Source: Gekko japonicus
Lineage: Eukaryota
Length of the DNA stretch: 64,000 nucleotides
Direction of reading: 5' to 3'
NCBI RefSeq assembly: GCF_001447785.1
Contig: NW_015172014.1
Coordinates: forward strand, 852,667-916,666
Positions within the stretch are counted from its first letter, which is position 1. The number at the start of each line of letters is the position of its first letter. Below the pieces are notes generated by a model. The model was given only the letters and a program-made list of their open reading frames with translations. It ran no database searches and was not told where the DNA came from. The position numbers and the translations under genes were made by a program. This document shows positions 34,213-64,000 of the stretch, one piece after another.

Positions 34213-37200
34213 AGCTTCTTGCTCCTTGTGGCCTGGGGCTTCTGGGAGCAGGGGGTGGGGCTTGTTGCATGTGCCCACCCCCTGGGCTTTTTACTGCCGG
34301 AGCTCCGCTCCTGTGCACTCTTGCAGGGAATGACCCCTGCGAGTCAGTATCACTGGTAGGGAAGGGGTGTCTCTCGTTCTGCTCTACAGGGATCCATGGC
34401 CTCGGGCCAGCTTTTCTCCTATGCCAGGGCCTCCAGGATCGAGAAGAGAGCACCTCTGGGCATACCATGTTTGTTGCAGACAGGCCGTTCAGATGGCCCA
34501 AGAGCAACCAGCTCCGCTCAGAACTGGCCAGCGAGGACAACAACAGGGGTCGGCTTGTCCTTGACCCGCTACCCGACCATCACTGGCTGGGTCCGTGCAA
34601 AGTAATCCCCCGTGGCCTGTCCAGTCGGTTAATGGCCACCAGCAGGCTGCATTCTGGGATCTTTCCTGGTAACTGAGAGGGCTCATCTGCCGCCGGTTGT
34701 GCCATGGCCATCCCCTGTACATTAAGAATATCTCTTTTGGGGTTGCTACCAAGTCTGTGGTTAAATGCGCAGACTCTAATCTGGGAGAACCGGGTTTGAA
34801 TCCCCACTCCTCCTTCAGATGCAGCCAGCTGGGTGACCTTGGGTCAGTCACAAGCTCTCTCAGAGCCGTTCTCTCAAGAGCAGTCCTCGAAAGCGCTCTC
34901 TCAGCCCCGCCTACCTCGCAGGGTGTCTGCTGTGGGGAGGGGAAGGGAAAGGAGATTGTCAGCCGCTCTGAGACTCTGAGGGAAGGGCGGGGTATAGATC
35001 CAATCTCTTCTCTTCCCCTCCTCTCAAATACACAAAGGAATCACAACAGCAGGAGAAATGTCGTCCGATGTTCTCCATTTGCTCTCTCCCTTTCAAGAGT
35101 CACTTCCCTTCCCTTCTTCCTTGGTTGCCAACCTCCAGTCGGGGCCTGGGGAGCTCCTGGAATCACAGCTGGTCTCCCAACTAGAAAGATCAGTTCCTCT
35201 GGAGGAAATGGCCTCTTTGGAGGGTGGGCTCTGTGGCATGATAGCCGCTGTGGTCCCTCCGGGCCTCAGTCGAGGCCGTTCACAGGCTGGGCCCCCGAAT
35301 GGCAGCTGCCAAGATGGAGAGCTCTTGAGTGTGTGTGTTCTGCGTCAGAAGGAGCCAGATTACCTCCAGGGCTTCCCCGGCCCCCTCTTCTTCCTCCAGA
35401 CAACGGGCAGTGGGAGATCCGGCACAAACCGGCCCGCAAGAACACCCTCCCCGGAGACCCCCTGTACGAGGACATCACCTTCCACCTCATCATCCGCCGC
35501 AAGCCCCTCTTCTACCTCATCAACGTCATCATCCCTTGCGTCTTGATCACCATCCTGGCCATCTTCGTCTTCTACCTCCCTCCGGACGCAGGTGGGTGGG
35601 TCCCCCCCCACGGGGCAGCCTCTCAGAAGCCAACGTTCCCTCCAGGGGTCATTTCGTAGAAAAAGAGGTGCAGGAGCTCATTAGCATAATTCATTAGCAT
35701 AACTTATTTGCATATGCCACACCCCCTGACATCACCGGAAGTGTGTCAGATGGCAACACCCACCACTCAGGCTCCACTGGACTGTTTTGGATTCCTAGCT
35801 ATTGGGGGGGGGGAGACGTGCAGATCTGTCCTCACAAAGGAGGAAGAGCTTGTACCTGAATAAAACCTGGTCGTAAAGGTGCCACTGGACTGTTTTGGAC
35901 TGGGGGGCCGGGAGGGGGGCTCTGCAACTTACCTGGCTGCTTCTTGCTCTGACTGAGGGCTGCTGGGAGCAGGGGGTGCGGCTTGTTGCATGTGCCGGCC
36001 CCCTGGGCTCTTTACTGCCGGAGCTCCGCTCCTGTGCGCTCCTGCAGGAAATGACCCCTGGTTCCCTCTAAGCTGCGGAGTCTTATTGTGAGCAAAAATT
36101 CCACTTTGGAAACTCCTGGCATTGAAGTTGTGAGCGAGCGACTGGGCTGCTGCAGAAATTACTTTGCTCTGGAGCCCCGTCCTTCCTGAGCGAAGACAAA
36201 AACGTGTGAGCCGGAGGCTAAAAACCTGTGAGCTGGCTCACACTCACTCGGCTTAGAGGGAACACTGCTCTCAGCTCCTCCGAGCTTCTCAGGGATGGCC
36301 TCTCCTCTGAGACGGAAGGCGTTTCCAAATCAGGTCAAAACGGAAGAGTGCCGCCGTCACGCAATCCTAGCTCTTCCAAATTCCTCCACTAACCCTTCCC
36401 GGCAGGACCAGATGTCCATCAGGCGATGAGACCCTTCCCCCCCCCATCTCAGGCTGGCAGGATGGCTGCAGCCAAAGTCCCTCGGTTCCCCACAGGAGAG
36501 GCACCCATCTGCCCGCCAAGCTGTGCCTTGAAACAGCCCCCCCAGCCCCCCCCCCCCCCAGAATAGTCTCTACCTCCACCCAGCAGATTGGCACATCGTT
36601 CCGTTTCACAGCTCTCCTTGAAACGCGGTTTGCCTGCTGGGTCTCTGATCTGGACGGGGCTGACAGGGGTAACCAAAGGTCCAACCGCATTCATCAACAT
36701 GGGCCGAGTCAGGCCCTTTGTCCCTTAAGGTCAGTGTGGTCTTCTCAGACTGGCAGCCGCTCTCCAGGGTCTCAGGGGGCAGAGAGGCGTCTTTCCCATC
36801 ACCGCCTGTTGTCGTTGCTGTTCCGTCACACAGTCGGGTCCGACTCTTCGCGACCCCACATCACGCCAGGCCCTCCCGTCTCCCTTCGTGCTCCAGAGTT
36901 TGCTCAACTTCATGTTTGTCGCCTCGATAACACTGTCTAACCGTCTCATCCTTCATCTTTGACCTTCAGTCTTTCCCAGCATCAGGGCCTTCTTCTCCAG
37001 GGAGTGCTCCCTCCCTTCTCACTGGGTGGCCAAAGTACTTGAGCTTCAGTTTCATTATCTGGCCTTCCAGGGAACAGTCAGGGTTGATTGCTTTTAGGAT
37101 TGACCGATTTGATCTCCTGGCAGTCCGGGGGACCTCCTGCCTCGTCTTTTTAGCTGGAGATGCTGGGGATGGAACGCGAGACCTCCTGCATGTTGATGGT

Positions 37201-40200
37201 CTATCAGTGAGCCACAGCCCCTACCCAGAACTGCCTTATACTGGAGCCGCCTTATACTGAGTCAGACCATTGGTCCATTAAAGTCAGTGTGGTTTCGCAG
37301 ACTGGCAGCGGCTCTCCAGGGTCTCAGGCAGAGACGCAGTCACACAGTCGAGTCTGACTCTTCGCGACCCCACGATGGACCACCTCACACCAGGCCCTCC
37401 TGTCTTCCGTCGTGCTCCGGAGTTTGCTTGACAAAACTCTGTTAGCCTTTGCCCTGCTTCATTTTCTCCTCCAAGGCCAAACTTGTCTGTTATTCCGGTT
37501 ACCTTTTGACTTCCTACTTTAGCATTCCAGTCCCCTATGATGATGAGGACATCTCTTTTTTTGGTGTTAGTTCTATGAGGTGTTGCGGGTCTTCATAGAA
37601 CCGGTCCACTTCAGCCTCTTCTACCTCCAGTTAGGCGTAGTGGTTAAGTGCACAGAATCTAATCTGGGAGAACCGGGTTTGATTCCTCACTCCTCCACTT
37701 GCAGCTGCTGGATGACCTTGGGCAAGCCGTAGTTCTGTCAGAGCTGTTCTTGAAAAAAGAGCCATTTCTGTCAGAGTTCTCTCAGCCCCACCGACCTCGC
37801 AGGGTGTCTGTTGTGGGGAGGGGAAGGGAAAGGAGTCTGTAAGCTGCTCTGAGACACCTTTGGGTAGTGAAGGGCGGGGTATAAATCCAATCTCCTCCTC
37901 CTCCTCTTCTTCTTCTTCTGCTGCTGCGTCAGTACTTGGGGCATAGACTTGGATTACTGTGATGTTAAACCCACCTGATGTGCAAATGTGTACCTGTGAA
38001 GTCACAATGCAACTACCAGAGAATGAGTCAGGCCCTTTTGGCCACCCAGCCCAGCCTCATCACGGGAGGAGCAGATTTCCTGGGGAAGGATTCCTTTTTT
38101 TGGCCCAGGAAGCTTGTGCTGCGGCTGTGTCCCGAGTTCCACTTGCGCTAGGAGGATTTCTAAAATTAGCTCTGGAATGGGAGTTGACCCGGCTCGCTCC
38201 ACCTTTCAGCCCCTTCCATTGTTTGTCTCGCTCTCTCGTTCTCTCTCCCCATGTAACGGATGCACATGTGTGTGCTGGCTGGATCATGCCCACAACAAGA
38301 GAGCAGTTGGAGCCAGTGCTCCCTCTAAGCTGAGTTAGTGTGAGCTAGCTCACAGTTTTTTAGCCTCCGGCTCACACATTTTTGCCTTAGCTCAGGAAGG
38401 GTGGCTCCAGAGCAAACTAATTTATGCAGTAGGCAAATCGTTGGCTCACAACTTTAATGCCAGTAGCTCACCAAGTAGAATTTTGGCTCATAAGACTCCG
38501 CAGCTTATAGGGAGCACGGGTTGGTACATGTGAGAGGGTCACCATTCTTTTGGTCCAGTGTTCCGCTTTTTTAGAATGCGTGATACAGCAGACAGGAATA
38601 ATCACTTATAGTTTAATCATATAACTTAATGGATAAATTCCATACTTTGTAATTCATCTGTCATCCAAAAGTACTATCAGCAATCCTGTGTTCTGCCTTT
38701 ATGTAATCAACCCTACTTCTCTGTATAATGTTCTGTATTAAAGGTAAAGGTAAAGGTTCCCTTGCTCGAAAGCCAGTCGAATCCGACTCTAGGGTTGCGG
38801 TGCTCATCTCCGTTTCAAAGCCGAAGAGCCAGCGCTGTCCGAAGACGTTTCCGTGGTCATGTGGCCGGCATGACTAAACACCAAGGTGCACGGAACGCTG
38901 TTCCCTTCCCACCGAAGTGGTACCTATTTATCTACTTGCAATTTCTTGCTTTCGAACTGCTAGGTTGGCAGGAGCTGGAACTAGAGACAGGAGCTCACCC
39001 CGTCTTGCGGCACCCGGGTCTTGAACTCCTGAACTCCTGACCTTCCACAGCCTGCAGTTCAGCATCTTAACCACTTGAGCCACTGCAGCTCCTTAATGTT
39101 CTGTATTACTGTGTTATTAAAAGTTAATAAAGTTTCTATTTAAAAAAAAAATACAGCAGACAGGAAAAGACCCGGGTGGCAAGAAGTGACTGAGGGCAAC
39201 AGCAAGCAACGGCTGCCTGCACAGAACCCTGTCAGAATTCATGCCACACAGGTGCATTCTGGGCTTTCCAGCCTCCCAGTGGATGAGGCCTGGAGATCTC
39301 CCAGAATTACAGCCGACCTCCAGACTACAGAGGCCAGCCCAATGTTCCCTCTAAGCTGTGGAGTCTTGTGAGCAAAAATTCTACTCTGCGAGCTCCTGGC
39401 ATTAAAGTCGTGAGCGAGCGATTTGGCTACTGCATAAATGAGTTTGCTCTGGAGCCCCATCCTTCCTGAGCTAAGACAAAAATGTGCAAGCCGGAGGCTA
39501 AAAAACTCTGAGCTAGCTCACAGTAACTCAGCTTAGAGGGAACACTGGAGGCTACATCCCCCGGAGAAAAAGGCTGCACTGGAGGGTGGACTCCGGGACA
39601 TTGTTCCGTGCTGAGGTCTCTCCCCAGGCTCTGCCCCCAAATCTCCTAGAGTTTCCCAGCCTGGAGTTGGCAACCGTGTTACCCAGCCACTGCGCCCTCT
39701 CTAGGAGCAGTTCACCCCCCAAGCAGACCTGCACTGCTGTGGCAGGGGCACTGGAAGGGGGGGACCCCATTTCTCTTCCCTCCCAGACTGTGGCGGCTCC
39801 AGCCTGTTTGCGAAATCTTGGGACGTGTTCGAAATTGTGACGCGGAGAGTGCCTCTGAACATGTGCAGAGCGATTCCTCCTCAAAATCAACTCACAGATT
39901 TCGCAGGCAAAGCACACAGGGTCTGATTTCTGGGCAACAGGCCTACTGCAGAGAAAGTTAACTGTGCACGCAGCCTGCTGGGCCTCCCCTCGGTGCCGTC
40001 GGACTCTAAATTTGTTCTACTACTTCAGACCAACACGGCTGACCAACTGGATCTTTCTCCAGCCTGGCTCCCTGCCCTTTGACACCCGTGAACCAGCAGT
40101 CCATCGGCACAATTAACTTCCTTAGCGGCAGGCACCCATGGGGTGTTTGGTCAGGGCCGTGTTCCTCCCCTCAGCGAGTGACCTTCCCTCCTTTCCCGCC

Positions 40201-43200
40201 TCCCCTAGGGGAAAAGATGACCCTCTCCATCTTCGCCCTCCTCACCCTGACGGTGTTTCTTCTCCTGCTGGCCGATAAAGTCCCGGAGACGTCCCTGGCG
40301 GTGCCCATCATCGTCAAATACCTCATGTTCACCATGATCCTGGTCACCTTCTCCGTCATCCTCAGCGTGGTGGACATGAACCTGCACCACCGCTCTCCCA
40401 ACACGCACGAGATGCCCTTCTGGGTGAGGCAGGTAGGGCTCCCTGCTCCAGAGGGGCACCGGGGACCACCGGGGGTCAGCTGTGTTCCAGAGGGAGAAGG
40501 AACGGGGGCTGCCGTGGAGCCAGATCCATCTTGACATTATTTCATTACCCACATGGTCATTCAGGATCACTGTTGTGGGGCCCAGGTCACGTGGTGGTGG
40601 TGGTGGTGGAAGAGAGTGCCGTCAAGTTGCAGCCGACATGGTAGCCCTGTTGGGTTTCCAGGCAGGAGACAAGGTAGTTTGCCATTGCCTGTGTCTGCGT
40701 AGCAACCCTGGGCTTCCTTAGAGGTCTCCCATCCAAGTACGAACCAGGGCTGACCTTGCTTGGCTTCCGAGGTCCTATCAGGTCGGCCTAGCCAGGTCCA
40801 TCCAGGTCACATACGCACAACAAACATGAACCAGTTTGAAAGGGCTGTAAGTGTCATGGATGTCCCACACAGACACCTGGAGACCTGCGGTTTCATGGCA
40901 GAGATCTCTAGTCCAGGGGTGTCAAACATGCAGCCCGGGGGCCAGATCAGGCCCCCGGAGGGCTTCTATCAGACCCGCAGTGGAGCTGGCTGTCTTCTGC
41001 TTCTTCTTCCAGTTCTGCTGCTGCTGCATCATCATCGTAGGTTTGCAGTTTACAGAGACACACCTGAAATATTCAAGATTGCCACAGCACAGACATTTTG
41101 ATGCAGCAATTCAGAGCAAGAGGTGTCAGTTATCAGACACTGTTAAATAAACAAATATTGCAAGAGTGCTGATGTTTTAAGCATGTTTTTATTTTAAGTT
41201 AAAAAAAACCCTTTGTGTTTGTGTCCTTTATAAAGTTTATATCTCCGCTACCTGGCATTACATTTTATGACACATGTGGCCCCGCCCGACAAGTTTATGT
41301 CAGATCCGGCCCTCATCACAAATGAGTTCGACACCCTGCTCTAGTCCCTCCCAGGTTTCCGCAGTGGAGCGTCATGTCTACCTGGTGCAGGTCAACCCAT
41401 TTCAAGCCTGCGTAATAGATTTGAAACTGGTTTCTATGTAAAGTTTAGAAGTGGTGTCTTGGAAGGGGTGTGTGTCTGCTTTTGTTTGTTTAAAAATATG
41501 CAGGTCGAGCACAGGTGACTGGGAGGGACATGGGGGCAATGCGGAATCAGGGCGGGGCCTCCAACAAGCCAGCGTCTTCTGGCCACACCTCTGAAGCCTC
41601 CCTTCCCGGCACCAGCCAGTTTGGAAACTCATGTTTGTCCCAACCTCCGTGGCTTCTACAAAATCTCACTTGCCTCATGGATTGTCTGAAAGTGGGCCAA
41701 ACGAGGGCCGAAGGCAAGGTGCGTACCTACCTGCCTGATGCAACCAACCTCCAAAGGTACGTGGAGACTCTCTCTTTCCTCTGTCTCTTGTCTCTAGATT
41801 TTTATCCACAAACTTCCTCGGTATTTGGGGCTGCGTCGTCCAAAGCCGGAACCCACTATCAAACCCGTCCCCTTGCCCCCAAAACAGGAGCCCACGGTGA
41901 AAAGCAACCGTCGTATGGATGAGTATTTCCTCCGCACACCTGCCTGTGACTTCCTCTTCCCCAAACCTAACAGGTAAGTTTCTGACCAGAGGAGGGATCT
42001 GGGTGAAATTGCTGGAAAACTATATATCAGGAGTCCACAAGAGTGCTCCTTTCCTGATGCCTGCCAAGTGTCTTTATTAAGTCTACAGGACCAGGTGGGG
42101 CTTTTACCCAGCAAGGCTTCTGATTGGCCGCTGGAGATTTGATTGGCTGTGCCGATTTTTTAAAATGTTCCTTTGGCAACAGCTGCCACCATAGTCCAAA
42201 GATCTTCACTGTGTGACTGAAGGTCAACTGAGGCAACCATTTTGTGGCTGCCTCCACCTCCTGAGGCAGCCATTTTGTGGCAGCCATCTTGTAGCTTTGC
42301 CCACCATACTCCATCAGTATTCCAAAGCTGCCCACAGGCTCTAAAAGGTTGGGGGCCCCTATACACTGTGGCCGTGGAAATGTGCAGGGTATTTTGTCTT
42401 CTTTTACAATTTTTAGGCGAAAAATTGAAATGGGGTGGGAGGAGTGACCCATCTTGCAGTATTTCCTTGATAGCTGTTCATATCCTTCCCTTCAACAATC
42501 CACCCCTTATTACCCTACCTGTACTTTCCTTGTCCTTCCCTCCATTGGCTGAAATTCTGATTGAAAGCTCCATGGGCCAGGGATGTGTAGTCACCAGAGT
42601 GTTGGATTCCAGGCTACAGCAGACCCAGGTTTGAAACCCCTGCTCTGCCATGGAAGCTCGCTGGATGACCTCGGGCCAGTCACTCCCTTTCAGCCTATGT
42701 TGTAAAGATAAAATGGGAAAGGAAGGACCAGGCATGCTGCTCCTAGCTTCCTTGAAGAATATTTAAAAGTTTAATGAACAGTTTAAAAGAATATATGTAG
42801 CCTGTCCAAGCATCAGACTGAGCATGGATATAAAGAAAAGGTGAAATCACACAGTTCTGTAAACCTTCTATTTATTCTAAATGATATTTAACTAGGATAA
42901 GCTACTAATTCTTGGAACTGCAGCCTTTAAAAGTGCAGCATTACCTGGACAAGACGGACTTCCTAGGTAAAAGTTTAGTCCTTCATGGCCTGTACCCATA
43001 AAAACAGAAGCAGGTTTTTTCTTGTTGTCCTGAGAATGTATAATCTCCTTTTGGTAGTCCATCCCTCTCTGGGGTCAGTCATGATGTTTCTGAGCCACAG
43101 TCTCTTTCCCTGTTTCTTGTCTTTAGGTGTGACAATCTAGAAGAGGTGTTAGATGGTAGACCCTTTGTCTCACTCCAGCTAGAGCCATTTGCATAAATAA

Positions 43201-51284: not shown

Positions 51285-51290
51285 TTTATT
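51285..51290 (-). terminator. PolyA signal of SAT2-like paralogue A
   Basis: TTTATT on + (AATAAA on -), about 130 nt after the stop codon. Confidence 0.6.
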
Positions 51291-51422: not shown

Positions 51423-54400
51423 CTAGAATTTGCTCTGGGCGGCCATCCTGCGTAGCTGCGTCTCCTGGAACCGGAAGAGGTTCCAGCCATCTTTGACCGT
51501 GCGGTCTTCACCTCCGTTACGCTCAAGGAATCTTATGTTCTCCGGCTTCTCAGAGGAGCTGTGCATTCGGATCTGGGAGCACCCTTTCTGCCAAGCGGCC
51601 TGTGGGCAGAAGGAGAAGAAGAAGGAGAGACTGGATTTATACCCCACGGCCCTTCGCTACCCGAAGGTGTCTCAGAGCGGCTCACAAACTCCTTTCCCTT
51701 CCCCTCCCCACAACAGGACACCCTGGGAGGTAGGCGGGGCTGAGAGAGCTCTTGACAGAAACTGATCTTTTTCAAGGACAGCTCTTGTCAGAGCTACGAC
51801 TTGACCAAGGTCATCCAGCAGCTGCAAGTGGAGGAGTGGGGAATCAAACCCAGTTCTCCCAGATTAGAGTCCGCACACTTAACCACGACACCAAACTGGC
51901 TCTCAATACCAAACTCGGGGAAGCAGACCCCTGAAAAACCCGCTCTTCTCCTCCACTGCCTTGCGGAAAGACCCCGACGTCAACAGTGAGCGAAAGGGAA
52001 ATTTGGCCTCTCTCTCCCACTAGGAGACCACCAAGGTGCCCTTTTATCATCCACACTCCTTTCCCAGCAAGGGAGGGGGAAGGGTTTCCCCCTGGCATCA
52101 CCGCCACACCACTCTCAGGTGTGCAGGGAAGCTCCACAAGAGGGGAGCCAATAACCAGCTCCAGAAGTGCAGGGAAGGGGGTGCCTTCACGCCCCCAATG
52201 TCAAAGCAGCGTGGGAAGACGAAGTCGCAGGAAGCATCTCCCACACCACAGCTGTTGCCGTGTAGCAATCTGAACCTTCGCTGCACAGGAAGACTGAACC
52301 TGGGGGCTTCTGCGCGCCCAGCCAGTGCTGGCCGCCCTCACAAAAGTCTGCCGCAGCCCCAGGAAACGGGGGTCCAGCAGCAGCTCCTCTGAGCGGCAGC
52401 CGCCAGTGCAGAACAGGGGCCCTTTGCCAGCCCGCCCCGCTTTCTGGCTCTTCCATGCTGAGAACAAAGCAGAACATCTGGCCTGGGGAGGGCCCAGCAG
52501 CCTCTGAACACGCCCAGCAAGACACACCTGGCCACGATGCCGACTCACCGCTATTGCTGTGTGGTGGAGCACCTTCCCAATTTGCCTCCCTGGAAGAGAG
52601 AACCACAAGATTCCTTGACCTGGCAACAGTGATCCACGCTATGGTCACCTCGAGAGTGGACTACTGCAACGCTCTCTACATGGGGCTGCCCTTGTCCCAA
52701 ATCCGGAAGCTGCGGCTAGTGCAGAATGTGGCAGCCAGGCTGCTGATGGGCCTCTCTATTCGAGAGCACATCCGGCCTGCGCTGAGAGAGCTGCACTGGC
52801 TGCCAATAGCATACCGGATTCGCTTCAAGGTGCTGGTTTTGACCTTTAAAGCCCTATATGGCTGGGGGCCTGCCTACCTGAGGGACCGCCTTTCCCCACA
52901 CGTTCCCCAGAGAGCACTAAGGTCGGGGACTCAACATCGCCCGACTGTCCCTGGCCCGGAAGACGCCAGATTGGCCATCACGAGGGCCAGGGCCTTCTCA
53001 GTGGCAGCTCCATTCTGGTGGAACGAGCTCCCGGAGGACATCAGGGCCCTGCTTGTCAGGCAAGGCGGGATAGAAATCGAAATAAATAAATAAATTCTAT
53101 GCTCTCTGTCGCCATTCCGGCCTGGTGGGCAGAAGCTGCTTCCAGGGCATCGGAGCAACGATTTCTGTGCTCAAGAGGGGGATGCCCAACCTGTACCCAG
53201 CGCAGCCTGTTTGCCCTCTGCCCATACCTCTGAATTCAGGCATGACGTACAGGTTGTCCATGTAAAGGTTCCTTCCTTTCCAGGTGCTGTAGGTGTAGAC
53301 GGACAGGACGTACCCGATGAGAGTGTGGCCTGTGGAGCAGAAAGGTTCACAGCATCCAGAGCAAGTGCGGGGAGGAGGTGGCCGCTTACCTGACCCTGGA
53401 GCAGTGTTCCCTCTAAGCCGAGTTAGTGTGAGCTAGCTCACAGTTTTTTAGCCTCCGGCTCACACATTTTTCTCTCCGCTCGGGAACGATGGGGCTCCAG
53501 AGCAAACTAATTTATGCAGTAGGCAAATCGCTCGCTCACAACTTTAATGCCAGGAGCTCACAAGGTAGAAGTCTGGCTCACAAGCAGGGGTCATTTCGTA
53601 GAAAAAGAGGTGCAGCCGCTCATTAGCATAACTTATTTGCATAACTTATTTGCATATGCCACACCCCATGACATCACAAGAGGTTTGTTAGAAGGCAGTA
53701 CCCACCACTCAGGCTCCACTGGACTGTTATGGATTGNNNNNNNNNNNNNNNNNNNNNNNNNNNNNNNNNNNNNNNNNNNNNNNNNNNNNNNNNNNNNNNN
53801 NNNNNNNNNNNNNNNNNNNNNNNNNNNNNNNNNNNNNNNNNNNNNNNNNNNNNNNNNNNNNNNNNNNNNNNNNNNNNNNNNNNNNNNNNNNNNNNNNNNN
53901 NNNNNNNNNNNNNNNNNNNNNNNNNNNNNNNNNNNNNNNNNNNNNNNNNNNNNNNNNNNNNNNNNNNNNNNNNNNNNNNNNNNNNNNNNNNNNNNNNNNN
54001 NNNNNNNNNNNNNNNNNNNNNNNNNNNNNNNNNNNNNNNNNNNNNNNNNNNNNNNNNNNNNNNNNNNNNNNNNNNNNNNNNNNNNNNNNNNNNNNNNNNN
54101 NNNNNNNNNNNNNNNNNNNNNNNNNNNNNNNNNNNNNNNNNNNNNNNNNNNNNNNNNNNNNNNNNNNNNNNNNNNNNNNNNNNNNNNNNNNNNNNNNNNN
54201 NNNNNNNNNNNNNNNNNNNNNNNNNNNNNNNNNNNNNNNNNNNNGCGGGGCTTGTTGCATGTGCCCGCCCCCTGAGCCCCTTACTGCCGGAGCTCCGCTC
54301 CTGTGCGCTCCCGCAGGAAATGACCCCTGCTCACAAGACTCCACAGCTTAGAGGGAGCATTGCTCTGGAGTAGGCCAGGAGGCGGGTGTTTCCAGTTTGA

Positions 54401-56466
54401 ACAACACGGAGGGCAGGCTTCAGAGCAGAAAAATCTAGACCGTTGTGCTTAGCAAAGGGAGCGCTGGCTCTCAACAGCTCATGCCCCGAAAACCTTGTGG
54501 GTCTCTAAGGTGTGGTGGGACCCAAATTTAGCTAATCTGGAACATTTGCAGGAGGAGAAGAACAGGCGTTCCCCCTTCACCAGCCACTTCCCCTTCGCCG
54601 GCAACCCTCGGCTCTGTCCCCAGGGGCTTCCTGGACATATTGTTTTGGGGGGAGACTACTGCCCCTCCCCAATTGCTCTTCTTGTTTTGCAGAAAGGGGG
54701 CCCGCTGGCCATGTGGAGAGGAATCAGGGACCCTTCTGCGAGGCAGCTGCCATCCAGCAGGCGGCCCGAGGTCCTTCACGTCTGTGTGGTGGGCCAAAAC
54801 CCGGCTGGTGTGGCTTCCCCCTCCCGCATGGAAGCGACATGGGTCCCGCTCCCCAGCAGCCCCTAATTACCTTCCTTGCTCTTTTGCTGTGGGGGCACCT
54901 CAGCCACGAAACACTCAAATCTTGGCTGCTTCCCAAATCCAGCCTCCTTCAGCTCTGGGGAGGAAGGAAGAAGGGGGGGGTTGTTAGTTCAGAAATCAGA
55001 AGCATCCCCTGTCCAATTGACAGTCGGTGGGGAAGAGTGCCAGGGAGAGGGGGAGGGGGGAGGGAAAGCACACCCAGCCGCTTTGGGTTGCCTACTGTTT
55101 AAGCAACCGCTGCTTGAACAGCCTCCCGACCAGGAGAGCAAGGGATCTTGCTCATCGTCCGAAACTTTGCCACCTGTGCAGTTCAAGGTAGGAGACCAGG
55201 CCAGGAAAGGAGCCAGCCAGCCCTGCACAGGAGGATCGGTGCAGAAGACCAAATACGGGAGACTCACACAGACCCCTCCAGTCCCGGCAAAAGGTTCACA
55301 CAGGTCCAAAGGCACACACACCCCCAGACAGCCCCCTACCTTCCACGTTGGTTCTGAGCTCGTTCAGGGGAACCTTGTAAATGACCGCAATCTCCTGCAA
55401 AGCAAAGACCGTGGAGGCTCAGGGTGAGAGTGTGCAGGTATGATAACACCCATCCCGCCCCCCCCCTTCCAAATCATACATCTCCTTAGCCTCAGAGTGC
55501 CTGCTGTGGTCGCCAAGAGGGTTCTCGTTCTCTGGGCCAAGAGTGTGGTTCTTACTCAAGGCTAGCCCAGGAGATTTTGGCACTCTTTGTTCCAGATATC
55601 CAGTTTGGTGTCGTGGCTAAGTGCACATACTCTAATCTGGGAGAACCAGGTTTGATTCCCCACTCCTCCACTTGCACCTGCTGGATGACCTTGGGCAAGC
55701 CATTGTTCTGATAAGAGCTGTTCTTGCAAAAGAGCAGTTTCTGCCAGAGCTCTCTCAGCCCCACCCACCTCACAGGGTGTCTGTTGTGGGGAGGGGAAGG
55801 GAAAGGAGTTTGTAAGCCGCTCTGAGACTCCTTCGGGTAGTGAAGGGCGGGGTACAAATCCAATCTCTTCTCTTCAATCACCAGGAGCCCTGAATCCCAC
55901 AGAACCTCTCCTGTAGACCCCGTTCCTTCTAGGAGAACATCTTCCCAGACGGGGCTTGTGATGGGCCAGCACAGGCAGTCTGTCTCCTCCTCTGCTCCAT
56001 CATGGTCCCCTTATCCTGACTCAGTCAGTTTATTCCCCAGCAGCAAAAGAAGAAGAAATTGGATTTATCCCCTGCCCTTCATGGCCCAAGGGAGTCTCAG
56101 AGCGGCTCACAATCTCCTTTCCCTTCCCCTCCCCACAACAGACACGCTGTGAGGCAGGTGGGGCTGAGAGAGCTCTTGACACAAACTGCTCTTTTGCAAG
56201 AACAGCTCTTGTTAGAACTACGGCTTGCCCAAGGTCATCCAGCAGCTGCGAGTGGAGGAGTGGGGAATCAACCTCGGTTCTCCCAGATTAGTGTCCGTGC
56301 ACTTAACCACGACACCAAACTGGCTCAAAGGGAAACGGGCCATGAATCCTGAGCTCTAGCTCTGGAAGCAGCCTCCGCCCCTGCTTTCCCTCCTCTCCCT
56401 CACCTTAATTAAGCGCATAATATCCGGGAGATCTCTGGGAGTGCAGGGGCGCACCACACAAGCCAT
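51423..56466 (-). CDS. SAT2-like (diamine/thialysine N-acetyltransferase family, GNAT) paralogue A; complete 6 exons, 173 aa, degenerate active site
   Basis: complement(join(51423..51599,52549..52589,53228..53329,54871..54954,55340..55394,56404..56466)) = 522 nt. Exon sizes 63/55/84/102/41/177 follow the SAT1/SAT2 gene structure; all GT-AG; Kozak GCCATGG. Protein MACVVRPCTPRDLPDIMRLIKEIAVIYKVPLNELRTNVEELKEAGFGKQPRFECFVAEVPPQQKSKEGHTLIGYVLSVYTYSTWKGRNLYMDNLYVMPEFRGRQIGKVLHHTAIAAAWQKGCSQIRMHSSSEKPENIRFLERNGGEDRTVKDGWNLFRFQETQLRRMAAQSKF. YSTWKGR and KGCSQ are SAT2-type. Confidence 0.92.
52613..53096 (+). mobile_element. L2-clade LINE 3' fragment in intron 4 of SAT paralogue A
   Basis: DLATVIHAMVTSRVDYCNALYMGLP..LVQNVAARLL..LHWLPI..RAFSVAAP.WWNELP with (TAAA)n tail. 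Confidence 0.9.
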
Positions 56467-56835
56467 GGCTTCCTGCTGCCTCTCTCCCTGCTGGGCTCCC
56501 TTCAGCCTTCTTAAGGGCCGGAGGATTGTGTAACCCACGCGGGTCACTCTTTGCCTCAGTGACTTCTTTGGTGGTGAGGCCAAGAGAGCTTAATAATCAA
56601 GTCAGTCTCCGGGAGGGAGGGAGCTGGCCTCTCCGGTCATATGATCTCAGGACCAAGTAGCGAAGACTGCCCCATCTGGGTTGGAAAATTCCTAGAGATT
56701 TTGGGGATGGAGCCTGGGGAGGGCAGGGGAGCCATTGACTCCACCCTCCAAAGCAGCCATCTTCTCCAGGGGGACGGTCCTCTATAGTCTAGAGGGCCAT
56801 TGTAATTCTGGGGCAGCCCCAGGCCCCACCACTCC

Positions 56836-58905: not shown

Positions 58906-61900
58906 ATGAGCTACATCATCCGCCCCTGGGCCCTGAAAGACCTCAAGGCCGTCGTGCGGCTTATTAGGGTGAGAAGCTGTTGGGGGGGGGGAGGTTAGAA
59001 CCCCAGAACAGAGGAGACAGGGAGGGCAGAGGAGGCTGAAAGGCGGACCAATAGATGAATTTGCCCCCCCCTCCAGATTCTGGTTTGTTTTTGGTCTGGG
59101 TGGGTGGGCAACGGGGGGGGGGAAGAGTGGTTGGGCTAAGAGGCCCAGATGCAAATCTCCGTTTCTGCTGTAAAGCTCGCTGCGTGACTCACTCACTCAG
59201 CCTAACCTACCTCACAGGGTTGTTGTGAGAGTGAAATAGGATTATGGCATAAACTCCTTGGAGGAAGGAGGCGATAAAAGTGTGCTGGACGGACAGACAT
59301 TTATTTGGATGGGCTAGGCTGCCTATTTCGTAAGACCTTTACGATTCTCTGGAAAACATTCCCTGAAGATCTGATAGGCAAGCCGAAGGTTCGCACTTGT
59401 GGTCCGGCGAGTCCTTTTCAGTCACCTGTGTAAGGATGCTGTCTGGCCCTTGCTGGGTTTAAGGGCACTCAGATGAGTTTTCTGGAGGGTGGGGAAGAGG
59501 TTGGTCACTGTGATGCCAGTGAGGGACTCCTGGAAATCCGCTTTCCCAGAGACTCTGGGGGGGATCTGCCCGGATGCCGAAGCATCAATGTATCCCGTCT
59601 TGATCTGTTTCAGGAATCGGCTTCTCTTCACAAAGCCCTGGACCAGGTGAAAACGACCCCAGAGAGTAAGGAAGGGGGCTATATATTCCGTCATCGCCAT
59701 TCCTCAGTCAGACTGTTGCTGCCTTAGTGTTTGTTGTGTCCTACTAAAGCGTGGAGTGCCTTCTCCCCCAAGAGAACCCAGGAGTCCCGGATCTCTGCCC
59801 AAGACCCCTCCCGGCCCATTTTTCTCCCTCCAGAAGGACCCCCAACCGGACTCTACTCTCTTTCCCATCCTGGATTGTGTTTTCCTGAACTCAGAAGTTT
59901 GGGCAAAGCAGAGCAGCTGCGTTTCCTCTTCTCCTGTAAACATTTGACACGGGGGGGGGGGTTTGTGGCCCATTGGCAGGCCCTCGGCGTGCTGAGCACT
60001 GGTCCCTCTTGGGGATTCCTGCAAAGAACAGGGATGAGGTGACCAGGCAAGGCCGTTCTTGGGTTGGTAAGCCACCCTGGATCAGTGACGGCATGGCTGC
60101 AAAAAGAGATCCAGAACAGACTGGCTCTCCAGCTTTGGTGTTGTGGTTAAGTGAGTGGACTCTAATCTGGGAGGACCGGGTTTGATTACCCACTCCTCCA
60201 TTTGCACCTGCCAGATGACCTTGGGCAAGCCGTAGTTCTGACAAGAGCTGTTCTTGAAAAAGAGCAGTTTCTGTCAGGGTTCTCTCAGCCCCACCTGCCT
60301 CACAGGGTGTCNNNNNNNNNNNNNNNNNNNNNNNNNNNNNNNNNNNNNNNNNNNNNNNNNNNNNNNNNNNNNNNNNNNNNNNNNNNNNNNNNNNNNNNNN
60401 NNNNNNNNNNNNNNNNNNNNNNNNNNNNNNNNNNNNNNNNNNNNNNNNNNNNNNNNNNNNNNNNNNNNNNNNNNNNNNNNNNNNNNNNNNNNNNNNNNNN
60501 NNNNNNNNNNNNNNNNNNNNNNNNNNNNNNNNNNNNNNNNNNNNNNNNNNNNNNNNNGTCCGAGGTCATCCAGGCAGGTGCAAGTGGAGGAGTGGGGAAT
60601 CAAACCCGGTCCTCCCAGATTAGAGTCCGCGCACTTAACCACGACACCAAACTGACTCTGAGACTCCCTTGGGTAGTGAAGGGTGGGGTATACATCCAAT
60701 CTCCTCTTCCTCCTCCTCCTCCTCCTCTTCTTCTTCTTCCTGGATCGCAGGAAGTCTAGAAAAGCCATTTCAGACTGAGGGGGAGCCCAGCTGGCCTTTT
60801 AGGCCTACCCCACCCCACCCCGACCCGTCCCACCCTCCTGGGACAGGCTGCCACTCCAAAGTGCACATCCACTTGGGCCTACTTGAAGCGACGACACGGG
60901 GGCTCCCTTATGATTTTAATTTTTTGAAATCATGTTATTTCCCCCTCCCCAATGTTTTCTCCCTAGTGCTCAGAGATGACGGTTTTAGGGAAGATGCCAC
61001 CTTTGGGTCCCTGGTAGCCGAGGTGCCCCCAGAACAGAGAAGCAAAGAGGGTAAGAGAGCACGAGGGCTGTTCAGAGACCTTTGGGACAAAATTCTGGGA
61101 CTCGCAGGGCCAGGAAAGTCCTGTGCTTTGCTTTCAAGTGACTTGGGGGTTGGGGAGGGGCCGTGGCTCAGTGGTAGGACATCTGCTTGGGATGCAGAAG
61201 GTCCCAGGTTGAACCCCCGGCATCTCCAGTTAAAAGGACCAGGCGGGAGGTGATCTGGAAGACCTCTGCCTGAGACCCTGGAGCCACTGCCAGTCTGAGT
61301 ACACAAGACTGACCCTGACGGAGCGAAAGGTCTGATTCAGTATAAAGCAGCTTCATGCGTCTGTCTGGTTGCCACCAATGCTCCCTCTAAGCTGCGGAGT
61401 CTTGTGAGCAAAAATTCAACATTGTGAGCTACTGGCATTAAAGTTGTGAGCGAGCGATTTGGCTGCTGCATAAATTAGTTTGCTCTGGAGCCACCCTTCC
61501 TGAGCTAAGACAAAAATGTGTGGGCCGGAGGCTAAAAAACTGTGAGCTGGCTCACACTAACTCAGCTTAGAGGGAACACTGGTTGCCACCCCTGCACGGA
61601 CCTTCTATGCAAGGAGGGTCCAGGATAGCTGCCGGCAGCCATGGAGTTGGTCCTTCAAGGGCCTCCCCAAACTGTGGGCTGAGAGGCAGCCTTACCTAGA
61701 GCAGGATTCATGGCGGAGAAGCCCTGGCTAGTGAGAGACCCTGGTGTAGTCGGGGCAGCCAGGTGTCCTCAGTTTGGTCCTCACCTGTGTCAGACAAGCC
61801 AGGGCCACTCGCAGCGCCTGCAACTGCAACTGCAGCGTGGAGGTGAAGGTTAACCTGGCCTGCCTTACAGAGGTGTTGGATCCATTGCCGGCGAATGTAG

Positions 61901-63320
61901 GCAAAGCACTCTGAAAGACCTGCAACTGCAGCGTGGAAGTGAAGGTTAACCTGGCCTACCTTACAGAGGTGTTGGATCCATTTCCGGCGAATGTAGGCAA
62001 AGCACTCTGAAAGCACCGTACAAATGGCGGTTCTCTCTGCTGTAAAGGGGAGTTAAAGAACAAAACAGAAAGCCCCTGGCCAGTCTGAAGGGAGGGAAAT
62101 CTGTCGCCTTCCAGGACTGCAGAGCAGTTATCAGGCTGTGAACCTGAGCAAAAATCCAGCCTGTTGGCTCTTCTGAAGGATAACATCTTCATTTGGAGTA
62201 CTGTGTACAGTTCTGGTCACCACACCTCAAAAGGGATATTATAGCATTGGAAAAAGTGCAGAAAAGGGCAACAAGAATGATAAATGGGTCAGAACACCTT
62301 CCCTATGAAGAAAGGTTAAAGCGCTTGGGGCTCTTTAGCTTGGAGAAATGACGGCTGAGGGGTGACATGATCGAGGTTTATAAGATTATGCATGGGATAC
62401 AGCAGGTCGAGAAAAAGGTATTTTCTCCCTTTCTCACCATACAAGAACTCGTGGGCACTCCATGAAATTGCTGAGCGGCCGGGTTAGAACGGATAAAAGG
62501 AAGTCCTTCTTCACCCAAAGAGTGATTAACACATAGGATTCACTGCCACAGGAGGTGGTGGTGGCTACAAGCATGGACGGCTTCAAAAGGGAATTAGATA
62601 AGCATCTGGAGCAGAGGTCCATCAGTGGCTTTTAGCCACAAGGTATAGATAGGAACCCACAGGCTGGGGCAGGTGATGCCCTGCCTTCTTGGTGCTTGGG
62701 GGGGGGGGCAACAGTGGGAGGGCTTCTAGTGTCCTGGCCCCACTGTTGGACCTCCTGAGGGCACCTGGTATTTTTGGCCACTGCATGACAGAGTGTTGGA
62801 CTAGATGAGCCATTGGCCTGATCCAACATTCCCTTCTCTTATGTTCTCATGTTGTCACTGGGAGTTGCAGCTCCCCTCTCTTTCTGTGGCAATAGCTTAT
62901 GCTGCAGGTGCAGGGGAGGAAGGGAGTCGTCTCGTCCGCTGGCTCACCCCCCAGCCAGCCCCCAGGCCTTCCTTCCACACCGTTCCTGCCAGGACCATAT
63001 GAGATCCTGCGACTTGACTGTGTAATAAATTATGCACTGCAAGTGAACACTTCCCTGTTTGCAGAAGATTAAATCGCATCATGTAGCATTATTGTCAGTT
63101 CAGCAAATACAGTAATTGCAAAATTGAAATCTGAAGAGAGGGCCGCGGCTGGGCCGTTGCCACCTAGACAGCCGTCTCCTCGTCTGACGATGGGTTTCCC
63201 CTTCCTCTCCCTGCCCAGGTGACACAATTGTTGGGTACCAGTTCCATTATTTGACCTACTGCACATGGGATGGCCATATTCTCTTTGGTGAAGATCTCTA
63301 CGTGCTCCCAGGTTTCAGAG
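58906..63320 (+). CDS. SAT2-like paralogue B, exons 1-4 (3'-partial; exons 5-6 not seen in the window)
   Basis: join(58906..58968,59614..59665,60967..61050,63219..63320); sizes 63/52/84/102, GT-AG, in frame: [101 protein letters not shown]. Confidence 0.9.
61824..62013. repeat. 96-bp tandem duplication
   Basis: CTGCAACTGCAGCGTGGA..GCAAAGCACTCTGAAAG at 61824 and 61920. Confidence 0.85.
62190..62850 (+). mobile_element. CR1 LINE 3' fragment
   Basis: Near-identical to 44620-45304, with small indels and stops. Confidence 0.9.
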
Positions 63321-64000
63321 GTGAGAAGGATGTTGGGATGCTTCTAAGCATGCACAGAGTGTTTCTCTCTCACTGCTGGAGATTGGTGGAAAGTGATCAA
63401 GGGTCTCTGCCTTCTGGACTCGCTGCACAAGAAGTGAACCTCGCTTGGTGTAATCAAGTCCCTTGGAGAGAGCCAGTTTGGTGCAGTGGTTAAGCGTGCA
63501 GACTCTAATCTGGGAGAACCGGGTTTGATTCCCCACGCCTCCACATGCAGCTGCTGGATGACCTTGGGCAAGCCATAGTTCTGTCAGAGCTGTCCTTGGA
63601 AAAGAGCAGTTTCTGTCAGAGCTCTCTCAGCCCCCACCTACCTCGCAGGGTCTCTGTTATGGGGAGGGGAAGGGAAAGGAGTTTGTAAGCCGCTCTAAGA
63701 CTCCGTGTGAAGGGCNNNNNNNNNNNNNNNNNNNNNNNNNNNNNNNNNNNNNNNNNNNNNNNNNNNNNNNNNNNNNNNNNNNNNNNNNNNNNNNNNNNNN
63801 NNNNNNNNNNNNNNNNNNNNNNNNNNNNNNNNNNNNNNNNNNNNNNNNNNNNNNNNNNNNNNNNNNNNNNNNNNNNNNNNNCCCCAGTTCACAGAAGGCT
63901 TTCAGATCAGCAGGCTTGAGTATCTCTTGCTTGAGAAATGAACAGTTTCCTCTGGCTGTTGTTGCCCCTGGCACCTAGGGAGTGTGAACCCCAGATACAG

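What the first reader, a model, noticed from the sequence alone, without database searches (positions are those of the whole stretch)
51423..56466. Intact SAT2-like gene that has lost the catalytic and acetyl-CoA-binding residues: candidate pseudo-enzyme
Seen: six exons with canonical splice sites, an unbroken 173-aa frame, Kozak ATG and AATAAA, so it does not look like a decaying pseudogene. Aligned by eye to human SAT1/SAT2 (gap-free over exons 3-6), the changes are: Tyr140 to Leu (codon CTT, 51527-51525; NIRFLER vs SINFYKR/AMDLYKA); motif A R-G-x-G-I-G to R-G-R-Q-I-G (Gly104 to Gln, 52584-52582); Trp132-Asn133 to Glu-Lys; Glu92-Asp93 to Asp-Asn; Glu28 to Tyr. Established: in SSAT/SAT2, Tyr140 is the proposed general acid, motif A and Asn133 bind acetyl-CoA, and Glu28/Glu92 bind the amine substrate. 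Structural motifs (RLIKE, GFG..P.F.C.VAE, YSTWKGR, GCSQ, GW..F) are retained. Inference: the fold is kept for a non-catalytic role (binder, regulator or structural protein) or for different chemistry.
Basis: partly seen in the sequence, partly recalled or inferred. Interest (0 to 1): 0.8.

Follow-up and report, generated by a model that had tools for sequence, protein, structure and literature searches.

The report
Reptile SAT2 copy with replaced active site
This gecko gene belongs to an old, reptile-only sister line of the enzyme SAT2 that has stayed intact and expressed since before lizards, turtles and crocodilians split, although the residues that do SAT2's chemistry were swapped for a different, equally fixed set, so it probably no longer works as that enzyme.

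Summary
A six-exon, GT-AG, 173-codon gene lies on the minus strand (56466-51423). The assembly gap is inside intron 3 and breaks no exon. The model is 100% identical to the RefSeq protein "diamine acetyltransferase 2-like [Gekko japonicus]", and spliced RNA contigs support it in one public run.

The odd residues are not private to this gecko. At least 26 full-length orthologues (geckos, other lizards, snakes, an amphisbaenian, turtles, alligator) form one clade (100/99) whose branching follows the species tree. All 26 carry Tyr at the Glu28 site, Asp92 and Asn93. Leu140 is in 22/26 and Lys133 in 23/26. His128 is a new invariant residue. All 38 canonical SAT2 proteins keep Glu, Glu, Asp, Tyr and Asn at those sites.

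Gly104, Asp131 and Trp132 became variable. Net charge flipped from acidic to basic. The fold is kept (pLDDT 92; TM 0.9 to human SSAT).

My reading is an ancient SAT2 paralogue with a new role that has lost canonical catalysis: most likely a ligand-binding or regulatory pseudo-enzyme, with altered chemistry a strong rival. I found no paper describing the clade. The scan has no note of it on other DNA.

The parts
56404..56466 (-). Exon 1 (CDS, Met1-Lys21); ATG at 56466-56464 in a GCCATGG context
   Evidence: RNA contig record 6 in run X1
56467..56553 (-). 5' UTR, at least 87 nt
   Evidence: spliced contig record 6 of run X1 reaches 56553
55340..55394 (-). Exon 2 (55 nt). The Tyr27 codon is 55379-55377, the site of canonical Glu28 in the family alignment.
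54871..54954 (-). Exon 3 (84 nt)
53737..54244 (.). Assembly gap (N), wholly inside intron 3; it interrupts no exon
   Evidence: the E3|E4 junction is gap-free in orthologues
53228..53329 (-). Exon 4 (102 nt, strands beta3-beta4). Asp92 is 53258-53256 and Asn93 is 53255-53253.
   Evidence: spliced contig record 2 of X1
52549..52589 (-). Exon 5 (41 nt, P-loop and helix alpha3). Gln104 is 52584-52582.
   Evidence: the 41-nt stretch between E4 and E6 in contig record 2
51423..51599 (-). Exon 6 (CDS plus stop at 51425-51423). His128 is 51563-51561, Glu132 is 51551-51549, Lys133 is 51548-51546 and Leu140 is 51527-51525.
51285..51290 (-). AATAAA polyadenylation signal, 133 nt after the stop
   Evidence: an X2 contig ends at 51257
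58906..63320 (+). Neighbouring head-to-head SAT2-like gene of a third clade (C). Exons are 58906-58968, 59614-59665, 60967-61050 and 63219-63320; the rest lies beyond the window. It keeps Glu92-Asp93.

Best explanation
This is the Gekko japonicus member of an ancient, reptile-only paralogue lineage of SAT2, the thialysine/diamine N-acetyltransferase. I call this lineage clade A.

Shown:
- The gene is intact, correctly spliced and transcribed.
- Its product keeps the SSAT GNAT fold and the C-terminal Gly153-Trp154 motif, which lies in the region where SSAT dimers exchange strands.
- It keeps the P-loop frame R101-G102-x-x-I105-G106.
- It keeps Ser82, Thr83 and Arg126, the residues that in SSAT2 reach into the partner subunit's site. 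Across the clade, position 82 is Ser or Asn and position 83 is mostly Thr.
- The catalytic set that acts within each subunit was replaced on the stem of the lineage and then held fixed: Glu28 site to Tyr, Glu92 to Asp, Asp93 to Asn, Asn133 to Lys, Tyr140 to Leu, plus a new His128.
- Gly104, Asp131 and Trp132 were released from constraint.
- The protein turned from acidic to basic.

Inferred: it no longer carries out canonical acetyl transfer to polyamines or thialysine. It is kept as a non-catalytic, ligand-binding or regulatory GNAT dimer subunit, that is, a pseudo-enzyme.
For: - Gene model and identity to P0016.
- Spliced contigs E1-E2-E3 and E4-E5-E6 at depth 33-38 in run X1.
- An exon-6 search of 1.84 billion representative proteins found only reptile relatives.
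- Orthologues exist in six geckos, other lizards, snakes, Rhineura, turtles and alligator.
- Clade A is monophyletic at 100/99* and its topology mirrors the species tree.
- Column counts, 26 clade-A against 38 canonical proteins: Y27 26/26 v E 38/38; D92 26/26 v E 38/38; N93 26/26 v D 38/38; L140 22/26 v Y 38/38; K133 23/26 v N 38/38; H128 26/26. Position 104 is R14/Q5/G2 plus other residues v G 38/38. W132 is kept in 2/26 v 38/38.
- 51 sites are at least 90% conserved in A against 54 in canonical SAT2.
- In 11 matched squamate species, the pocket is no longer more conserved than the rest of the protein in A (entropy 0.73 v 0.85, p 0.21). It is in SAT2 (0.38 v 0.60, p 0.04).
- Net charge is +2 to +10 in A against -8 to +2 in canonical SAT2.
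- The Pfam GNAT score drops from 60.8 bits (the Gekko kuhli SAT2 protein, P0049) to 41.9 bits.
- The AlphaFold2 model has pLDDT 92 and matches human SSAT at TM 0.90-0.93.
- Literature: Tyr140Phe abolishes SAT1 activity (PMC7271128). Glu92 is the general base and E92Q in mouse SSAT confirmed its essential role (PMC4964394). S82D/T83A and R126C inactivate SSAT2, and a Boltz-2 model places these residues as acting on the partner subunit's site (preprint 10.64898/2026.05.22.727066).
Against: - No activity or acetyl-CoA-binding data exist.
- The replaced positions are fixed in chemically capable residues (Tyr27, Asp92, His128, Lys133). That fits a remodelled catalytic or binding site at least as well as a dead one.
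- The P-loop frame is invariant, and atypical P-loops occur in active GNATs.
- Asp92 could still act as a base.
- Codon-level dN/dS was not obtained. Purifying selection is inferred from protein conservation and from intact ORFs in more than 26 species.
- Two raw RNA-seq runs of the species gave zero exon depth in the sampled reads (about 3% and 12% of the runs), so expression is restricted or low.
Confidence: 0.5

Rival explanations
1. It is an active acyltransferase with a new catalytic arrangement and a new, non-cationic acceptor. Lys133, His128 or Tyr27 take over proton handling from Tyr140 and Glu92. The less acidic pocket and basic surface suit a neutral or anionic substrate. Acyl-CoA is still bound by the retained P-loop frame.
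For: - Tyr27, Asp92, Asn93 and His128 are invariant and Lys133 is 23/26.
- R101, G102, I105, G106, V96 and F139 are kept.
- S/N82, T83 and R126, the amino-acid head-group contacts in SSAT2, are kept, and R126 is more conserved than in canonical SAT2.
- Active GNATs with atypical P-loops or non-Tyr proton donors are documented (PMC4964394).
Against: - The pocket as a whole lost its extra conservation.
- Positions 104, 131, 132, 136 and 143 around the acetyl-CoA and acceptor site are highly variable.
- The review cited in PMC10416765 calls the equivalent Tyr crucial in nearly all GNATs.
Confidence: 0.33
2. It is still an ordinary thialysine/diamine acetyltransferase, only slower. Asp92 serves as the base and water or another group replaces Tyr140.
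For: - The fold, P-loop frame, S82/T83/R126 and W84 are kept.
- E92D is a conservative change.
Against: - Five canonical positions that never vary in 38 vertebrate SAT2 proteins changed together.
- The charge flipped to basic, which is unfavourable for cationic substrates.
- Tyr140Phe alone abolishes SAT1 activity.
- A canonical SAT2 gene (clade B) coexists in the same species.
Confidence: 0.1
3. It is a duplicate under relaxed constraint on its way to becoming a pseudogene, intact only by chance.
For: - It evolves about 1.36 times faster than SAT2 in matched species pairs.
- There was no exon depth in two RNA-seq runs.
Against: - Orthologues of about 170-176 residues with no internal stop occur in more than 26 species spanning squamates, turtles and alligator, and the gene tree matches the species tree.
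- 51 sites are at least 90% conserved.
- Spliced mRNA is present in run X1.
Confidence: 0.03

Closest known systems
SAT2 / SSAT2, thialysine N-epsilon-acetyltransferase (human PDB 2BEI; reptile clade B, e.g. P0049)
   Same: - Same fold (TM 0.84/0.91 to 2BEI) and same length.
- Gap-free alignment from residue 41 on.
- Shared YSTWKGR, GCSQ and GW..F motifs, the P-loop frame, and S82/T83/R126.
- Same chromosomal neighbourhood type (FGF and nicotinic-receptor exons upstream).
- The tree places clade A inside the tetrapod SAT2 radiation.
   Different: - About 43% identity to the Gekko kuhli SAT2 protein P0049.
- Glu28, Glu92, Asp93, Asn133 and Tyr140 are replaced; Gly104, Asp131 and Trp132 are unconstrained.
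- New invariant Met127 and His128.
- Net charge is basic instead of acidic.
SAT1 / SSAT, spermidine/spermine N1-acetyltransferase (PDB 2B3V, 2G3T, 2JEV, 3BJ7)
   Same: - Best sequence and structure match in the PDB (E 6e-32; TM 0.90-0.93, rmsd 1.4-2.0).
- Numbering coincides from residue 27 on.
   Different: - 33-34% identity.
- It lacks the general acid Tyr140, the general base Glu92 and the acidic polyamine channel.
Squamate clade-C SAT2-like paralogue (the window's + strand gene; P0068, P0094)
   Same: - Sister group of clade A (99/94*).
- Head-to-head neighbour, with start codons 2.4 kb apart.
- Same exon 3 and exon 4 lengths.
   Different: - C keeps Glu92 and Asp93 in all three proteins seen, including the window gene.
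- Its two full-length orthologues also keep Gly104, Trp132 and Asn133, with Tyr140 in one and Phe in the other.
- C was found only in squamates.
Non-catalytic GNAT domains (the central GNAT domain of a three-domain aminoglycoside acetyltransferase; the C-terminal HAT-like domain of O-GlcNAcase)
   Same: The GNAT fold is kept while residues needed for acetyl-CoA use or catalysis are missing (PMC4964394; the O-GlcNAcase case is from my own knowledge and the listing of PMC3919268).
   Different: Those are domains inside larger proteins. This is a free-standing 173-residue protein, and its P-loop Arg and second Gly are intact.

Membership tests
GNAT superfamily (Pfam PF00583 Acetyltransf_1) | Profile match above the curated cut-off | tested here: met
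   P0016 (identical to the window model) scores 41.9 bits against a cut-off of 20.7. Single exons alone do not pass.
SSAT/SAT2 family (by descent) | Closest sequence and structure relatives are SAT1/SAT2; it sits inside the vertebrate SAT2 tree | tested here: met
   E 6e-32 to SAT1 and 6e-31 to SAT2. TM 0.90-0.93. The tree nests A+C among tetrapod SAT2, and a sauropsid-only clade is not rejected (AU p 0.39).
Functional SSAT/SAT2 acetyltransferase | General-acid Tyr140 | tested here: not met
   Leu140 in the window. L in 22/26 clade-A proteins, never Y; Y in 38/38 canonical proteins.
Functional SSAT/SAT2 acetyltransferase | General-base Glu92 and adjacent Asp93 on the beta4 bulge | tested here: not met
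   Asp92-Asn93 in 26/26 clade-A proteins; Glu-Asp in 38/38 canonical proteins.
Functional SSAT/SAT2 acetyltransferase | P-loop consensus Q/R-x-x-G-x-G/A | tested here: not met
   R-G-R-Q-I-G in the window. Position 104 is G in only 2/26 clade-A proteins. R101 and G106 are invariant. Atypical P-loops can still bind CoA.
   Glu132-Lys133 in the window. K133 in 23/26 clade-A proteins; W132 in 2/26.
Functional SSAT/SAT2 acetyltransferase | Measured acetyl transfer to thialysine, lysine or polyamines | not testable with these tools
   Needs recombinant protein.
Pseudo-enzyme | Homologue of an enzyme that lacks key catalytic residues yet is conserved under selection | tested here: met
   (protein-level conservation and intact ORFs across reptiles). 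Codon dN/dS was not obtained.
Pseudo-enzyme | Demonstrated absence of catalysis | not testable with these tools

The most novel reading that the evidence does not exclude
Clade A is a dedicated regulatory half-subunit. SSAT dimers exchange strands, and SSAT2's Ser82, Thr83 and Arg126 act on the partner's site. A heterodimer of clade A with SAT2 or with the adjacent clade-C enzyme would therefore have one hybrid working site and one silent site. Clade A keeps these partner-acting residues, though position 82 is Ser or Asn across the clade, while it has replaced the catalytic residues that act within its own subunit. It would tune or retarget the partner's activity, and the head-to-head arrangement with clade C would allow co-regulation.
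Probability: 0.12. Interest if true: 0.8.

Novelty: new variant of a known kind. Interest (0 to 1): 0.55.

Why it matters
SAT1 and SAT2 are much-studied enzymes of polyamine and lysine-analogue metabolism. A third, reptile-wide relative has been kept since before the crown reptile lineages split, with its catalytic set exchanged and its charge reversed. That makes it a natural experiment in how a GNAT enzyme is repurposed.

It offers a clean, testable candidate for a free-standing GNAT pseudo-enzyme or for new GNAT chemistry.

It also shows that the names the sources give these proteins ('diamine acetyltransferase 1-like', '2-like', 'thialysine N-epsilon-acetyltransferase-like', and in Anolis plain 'thialysine N-epsilon-acetyltransferase') imply an activity that these proteins probably do not have.

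Tried and rejected
- **Orthologue DNA:** No orthologue DNA was fetched, so codon dN/dS was not run and the head-to-head arrangement in other species was not checked.
- **Single exons against Pfam:** only a sub-threshold GNAT hit for exon 4.
- **Word search with exons:** it cannot reach full-length proteins because of the length rule. I therefore used the one full scan with exon 6.
- **Raw RNA-seq runs X21 and X22:** no exon depth in the sampled reads. Nearly all laid reads fall on intronic repeats.
- **ESM Atlas:** only the family's own clusters.
- **Literature searches** by the annotation names and for a described SAT-family pseudo-enzyme: no paper on this clade.
- **Model coordinates:** not readable in scripts, so I could not measure distances between Tyr27, Asp92, His128, Lys133 and the CoA site.
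- **SAT1 in the tree:** no SAT1 protein ids came back from the three word searches, so the tree has no SAT1 outgroup.
- **Rejected explanations:** an assembly or annotation artefact (RNA contigs and an identical RefSeq protein argue against it) and a hidden exon in the N gap.
Full report
**Observation**

Reading the minus strand and locating the exon ends by script gives six exons:

| Exon | Window coordinates |
|---|---|
| E1 | 56466-56404 |
| E2 | 55394-55340 |
| E3 | 54954-54871 |
| E4 | 53329-53228 |
| E5 | 52589-52549 |
| E6 | 51599-51423 |

- Together they make 522 nt, or 173 codons plus a stop.
- Every intron is GT..AG with a pyrimidine-rich acceptor.
- The start context is GCCATGG. AATAAA lies 133 nt after the stop.

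*The assembly gap.* The gap at 53737-54244 was tested first, as asked. It lies wholly inside intron 3. The E3|E4 junction aligns without any indel to SAT2 and to more than 20 orthologues of exactly 173 residues, so no exon is hidden in it. I did not fill it or look it up.

The joined sequence was never typed or sent to a search or fold tool. It was built only inside local scripts from window.fa. There it proved 173/173 identical to a protein that a search had already returned: P0016, 'PREDICTED: diamine acetyltransferase 2-like [Gekko japonicus]'. All full-length work then used P0016 by id.

*The substitutions.* HMMER alignments to solved SAT1/SAT2 chains are gap-free over exons 3-6. They confirm Y140L, G104Q, W132E, N133K, E92D and D93N at the stated codons. 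For Glu28, the pairwise alignment gives Lys. The 79-sequence family alignment puts the invariant Tyr27 there.

**Expression**

One reads call was allowed.

- Run X1 is kept as Logan contigs, and its kind is only guessed as RNA. It holds two spliced contigs.
- One contig (308 nt, depth 38) carries exon 4, then 41 letters (the length of exon 5), then exon 6.
- The other (308 nt, depth 33) carries exon 3, then about 54 letters (exon 2), then exon 1 with at least 87 nt of 5' UTR.
- A spliced form with exactly the predicted joints is evidence of mRNA.
- Run X2 has almost nothing on the exons.
- Two raw RNA-seq runs of the species (X21, X22; about 1.6 billion letters sampled from each, about 3% and 12% of the runs) have zero depth on the exons, while intronic repeats are heavily covered.
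- Expression is therefore real but restricted or low. The tissues are coded and unknown.

**Relatives**

A full phmmer scan with exon 6 (58 aa) against 1.84 billion representative proteins gave seven hits at E up to 0.001. All named full-length hits are reptilian. One weaker hit to a 1245-aa protein was not examined.

Word searches with full-length relatives returned three groups:

- **Clade A.** Found in geckos (Paroedura, Eublepharis, Euleptes, Heteronotia, Sphaerodactylus), cordylid, skink, lacertids, Rhineura, agamids, anoles, Varanus, Elgaria, boas, pythons, colubrids, vipers, turtles and alligator. Source names vary between 'diamine acetyltransferase 1-like', '2-like' and 'thialysine N-epsilon-acetyltransferase-like'; the Anolis carolinensis member carries the plain enzyme name.
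- **Clade B.** Reptile proteins 55-61% identical to echidna SAT2. This is SAT2 proper.
- **Clade C.** A small third group seen in Hemicordylus and Salvator. The window's + strand neighbour also belongs to it.

No bird, mammal, amphibian or fish protein fell in clade A. For birds this is only an absence among listed hits.

**Tree**

A tree of 67 proteins was built with IQ-TREE (LG+C20) and rooted on fish SAT2.

- Clade A is one group at 100/99*. Inside it, alligator plus turtles are set against squamates, with geckos in one group and all other squamates in the other. The gene tree follows the species tree.
- The lineage therefore predates the split of these reptile groups. By general knowledge that split is of the order of 250-280 million years old.
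- A and C are sisters (99/94*).
- Their place within tetrapod SAT2 is weakly resolved (86/53). A sauropsid-only origin (A+B+C as one clade) is not rejected (AU p = 0.39).

**What changed and what did not**

Counts are from 26 clade-A and 38 canonical proteins.

| Position (SAT numbering) | Clade A | Canonical SAT2 |
|---|---|---|
| Glu28 site | Tyr 26/26 | Glu 38/38 |
| 92 | Asp 26/26 | Glu 38/38 |
| 93 | Asn 26/26 | Asp 38/38 |
| 133 | Lys 23/26 | Asn 38/38 |
| 140 | Leu 22/26, never Tyr | Tyr 38/38 |
| 127, 128 | Met, His 26/26 (new) | variable |
| 126 | Arg 24/26 | Arg, Gln or Lys |
| 104 | variable: R14, Q5, G2, S, L, C, K, E | Gly 38/38 |
| 131 | variable | Asp 35/38 |
| 132 | variable, Trp 2/26 | Trp 38/38 |

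- Kept in clade A: R101, G102, I105, G106, V96, W84, F139, G153, W154 and S/N82-T83.
- Clade A has 51 sites at least 90% conserved against 54 in canonical SAT2. Only 25 of these are shared with the same residue.
- Mean pairwise protein distance is 1.36 times that of SAT2 over 55 matched squamate species pairs.
- In 11 matched species, the set of pocket positions has lost its extra conservation in A (entropy 0.73 v 0.85 for the rest, permutation p 0.21). It keeps it in SAT2 (0.38 v 0.60, p 0.04). I defined the pocket positions from the literature and my own knowledge.
- Net charge is +2 to +10 in A and -8 to +2 in canonical proteins.
- The Pfam GNAT score falls from 60.8 bits (the Gekko kuhli SAT2 protein, P0049) to 41.9 bits.

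**Structure**

AlphaFold2 on P0016 with an 81-sequence alignment gives pLDDT 92.2 and pTM 0.86. Foldseek ranks human SSAT chains first (TM 0.90-0.93, rmsd 1.4-2.0 A), with SSAT2 2BEI at 0.84/0.91. The fold is kept. Coordinates could not be read, so I measured no side-chain geometry.

**Literature**

- Tyr140Phe abolishes SAT1 activity (PMC7271128).
- Glu92 is the proposed water-mediated general base in human SSAT, and E92Q in mouse SSAT confirmed that it is essential. The P-loop consensus is Q/R-x-x-G-x-G/A, but several active GNATs have atypical P-loops. Human and mouse SSAT dimerise by exchanging beta7 strands (PMC4964394).
- An equivalent Tyr is crucial in nearly all GNATs, and degenerate P-loops occur in active polyamine-class GNATs (PMC10416765).
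- In SSAT2, S82D/T83A and R126C are inactive. A Boltz-2 model places Ser82, Thr83 and Arg126 of one monomer on the substrate's alpha-amino and carboxylate groups in the other monomer's site (preprint 10.64898/2026.05.22.727066).
- I found no paper on the reptile clade.

**Interpretation**

*Shown:*
- An ancient, vertically inherited, intact, expressed SAT2 paralogue.
- Its canonical catalytic residues were exchanged once, on the stem, and then frozen.
- Several acetyl-CoA or acceptor-side positions became free to vary.

*Inferred:*
- Canonical acetylation of polyamines or thialysine is lost. Three things point this way: five never-varying positions changed, Tyr140 alone is essential, and the charge reversal disfavours cationic substrates.

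*The split between readings:*
- I put about 0.5 on a non-catalytic binding or regulatory subunit. The pocket-wide loss of extra conservation and the variability at 104, 131 and 132 favour this.
- I put about 0.33 on a transferase with a remodelled site and a new acceptor. The invariant Tyr27, Asp92, Asn93 and His128, the near-invariant Lys133 and the intact P-loop frame favour this.
- Ordinary activity gets about 0.1.
- Decay gets about 0.03.

*A more novel reading.* Clade A keeps the residues that act on the partner's site (Ser/Asn82, mostly Thr83, Arg126) while it replaced the ones that act within its own subunit. This suggests heterodimers with SAT2 or with the adjacent clade-C enzyme that have one working site. 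It is untested. An earlier first-reader note on the same stretch (s1-816703) raised a similar idea.

**Limits**

- There is no SAT1 outgroup in the tree.
- The tissue of expression is unknown.
- There is no biochemical evidence.

**Verdict**

This is a new variant of a known kind: a conserved reptile-wide SAT2 paralogue with a substituted active site, carrying enzyme-style names from its sources and, as far as I could find, not described in the literature.

Noticed in passing
window 58906-63320 (+), continuing beyond the gap 63716-63881 or the window end: A second SAT2-like gene lies head-to-head with the finding, with start codons 2.4 kb apart. It belongs to a third clade (C), otherwise seen only in Hemicordylus (P0068) and Salvator (P0094). 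It keeps Glu92-Asp93. It has His at the Glu28 site, Cys82, Asp85 and Phe90-Gly91. Only exons 1-4 are in the window.
   Followed up: partly
proteins P0026, P0029, P0032, P0037 (sea turtles, 265-300 aa): In the two I aligned (P0026, P0029), the models are clade-A-like in the N-terminal part (Tyr27, Asp92-Asn93, Gln104) and canonical in the C-terminal part (Trp132, Asn133, Tyr140). They are probably read-through or chimeric models of adjacent A and SAT2 genes. P0032 and P0037 are similar in length and identity but were not aligned.
   Followed up: partly
proteins P0009 (Podarcis muralis) and P0011 (Zootoca): Lacertids carry an extra clade-A copy that keeps Gly104. It has Leu84 in place of the otherwise near-invariant Trp84, and His27. 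Zootoca has both copies on one contig.
   Followed up: no
proteins P0004 and P0010 (Podarcis isoform X2): These annotated isoforms skip exon 4 (102 nt, in frame). That would remove the beta3-beta4 strands, including positions 92 and 93.
   Followed up: no
window 10165-10749 and 18695-19405 (+); 34697-35659 and 40079-40534 (+): FGF-family exons (Pfam PF00167) and Cys-loop receptor transmembrane exons (PF02932) lie upstream on the + strand. By eye they look like FGF11 and CHRNB1, which are neighbours in the human 17p13.1 region that also holds SAT2.
   Followed up: partly
window 51752-51935, 53408-53591, 54328-54511, 55616-55983: Intronic SINE-like repeats attract hundreds-fold RNA-seq depth and many false joints. 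Any expression estimate for this gene must mask them.
   Followed up: no
window 51471: Run X1's cDNA contig reads T where the window has C. On the coding strand this is CGG to CGA, a synonymous change in Arg158.
   Followed up: no
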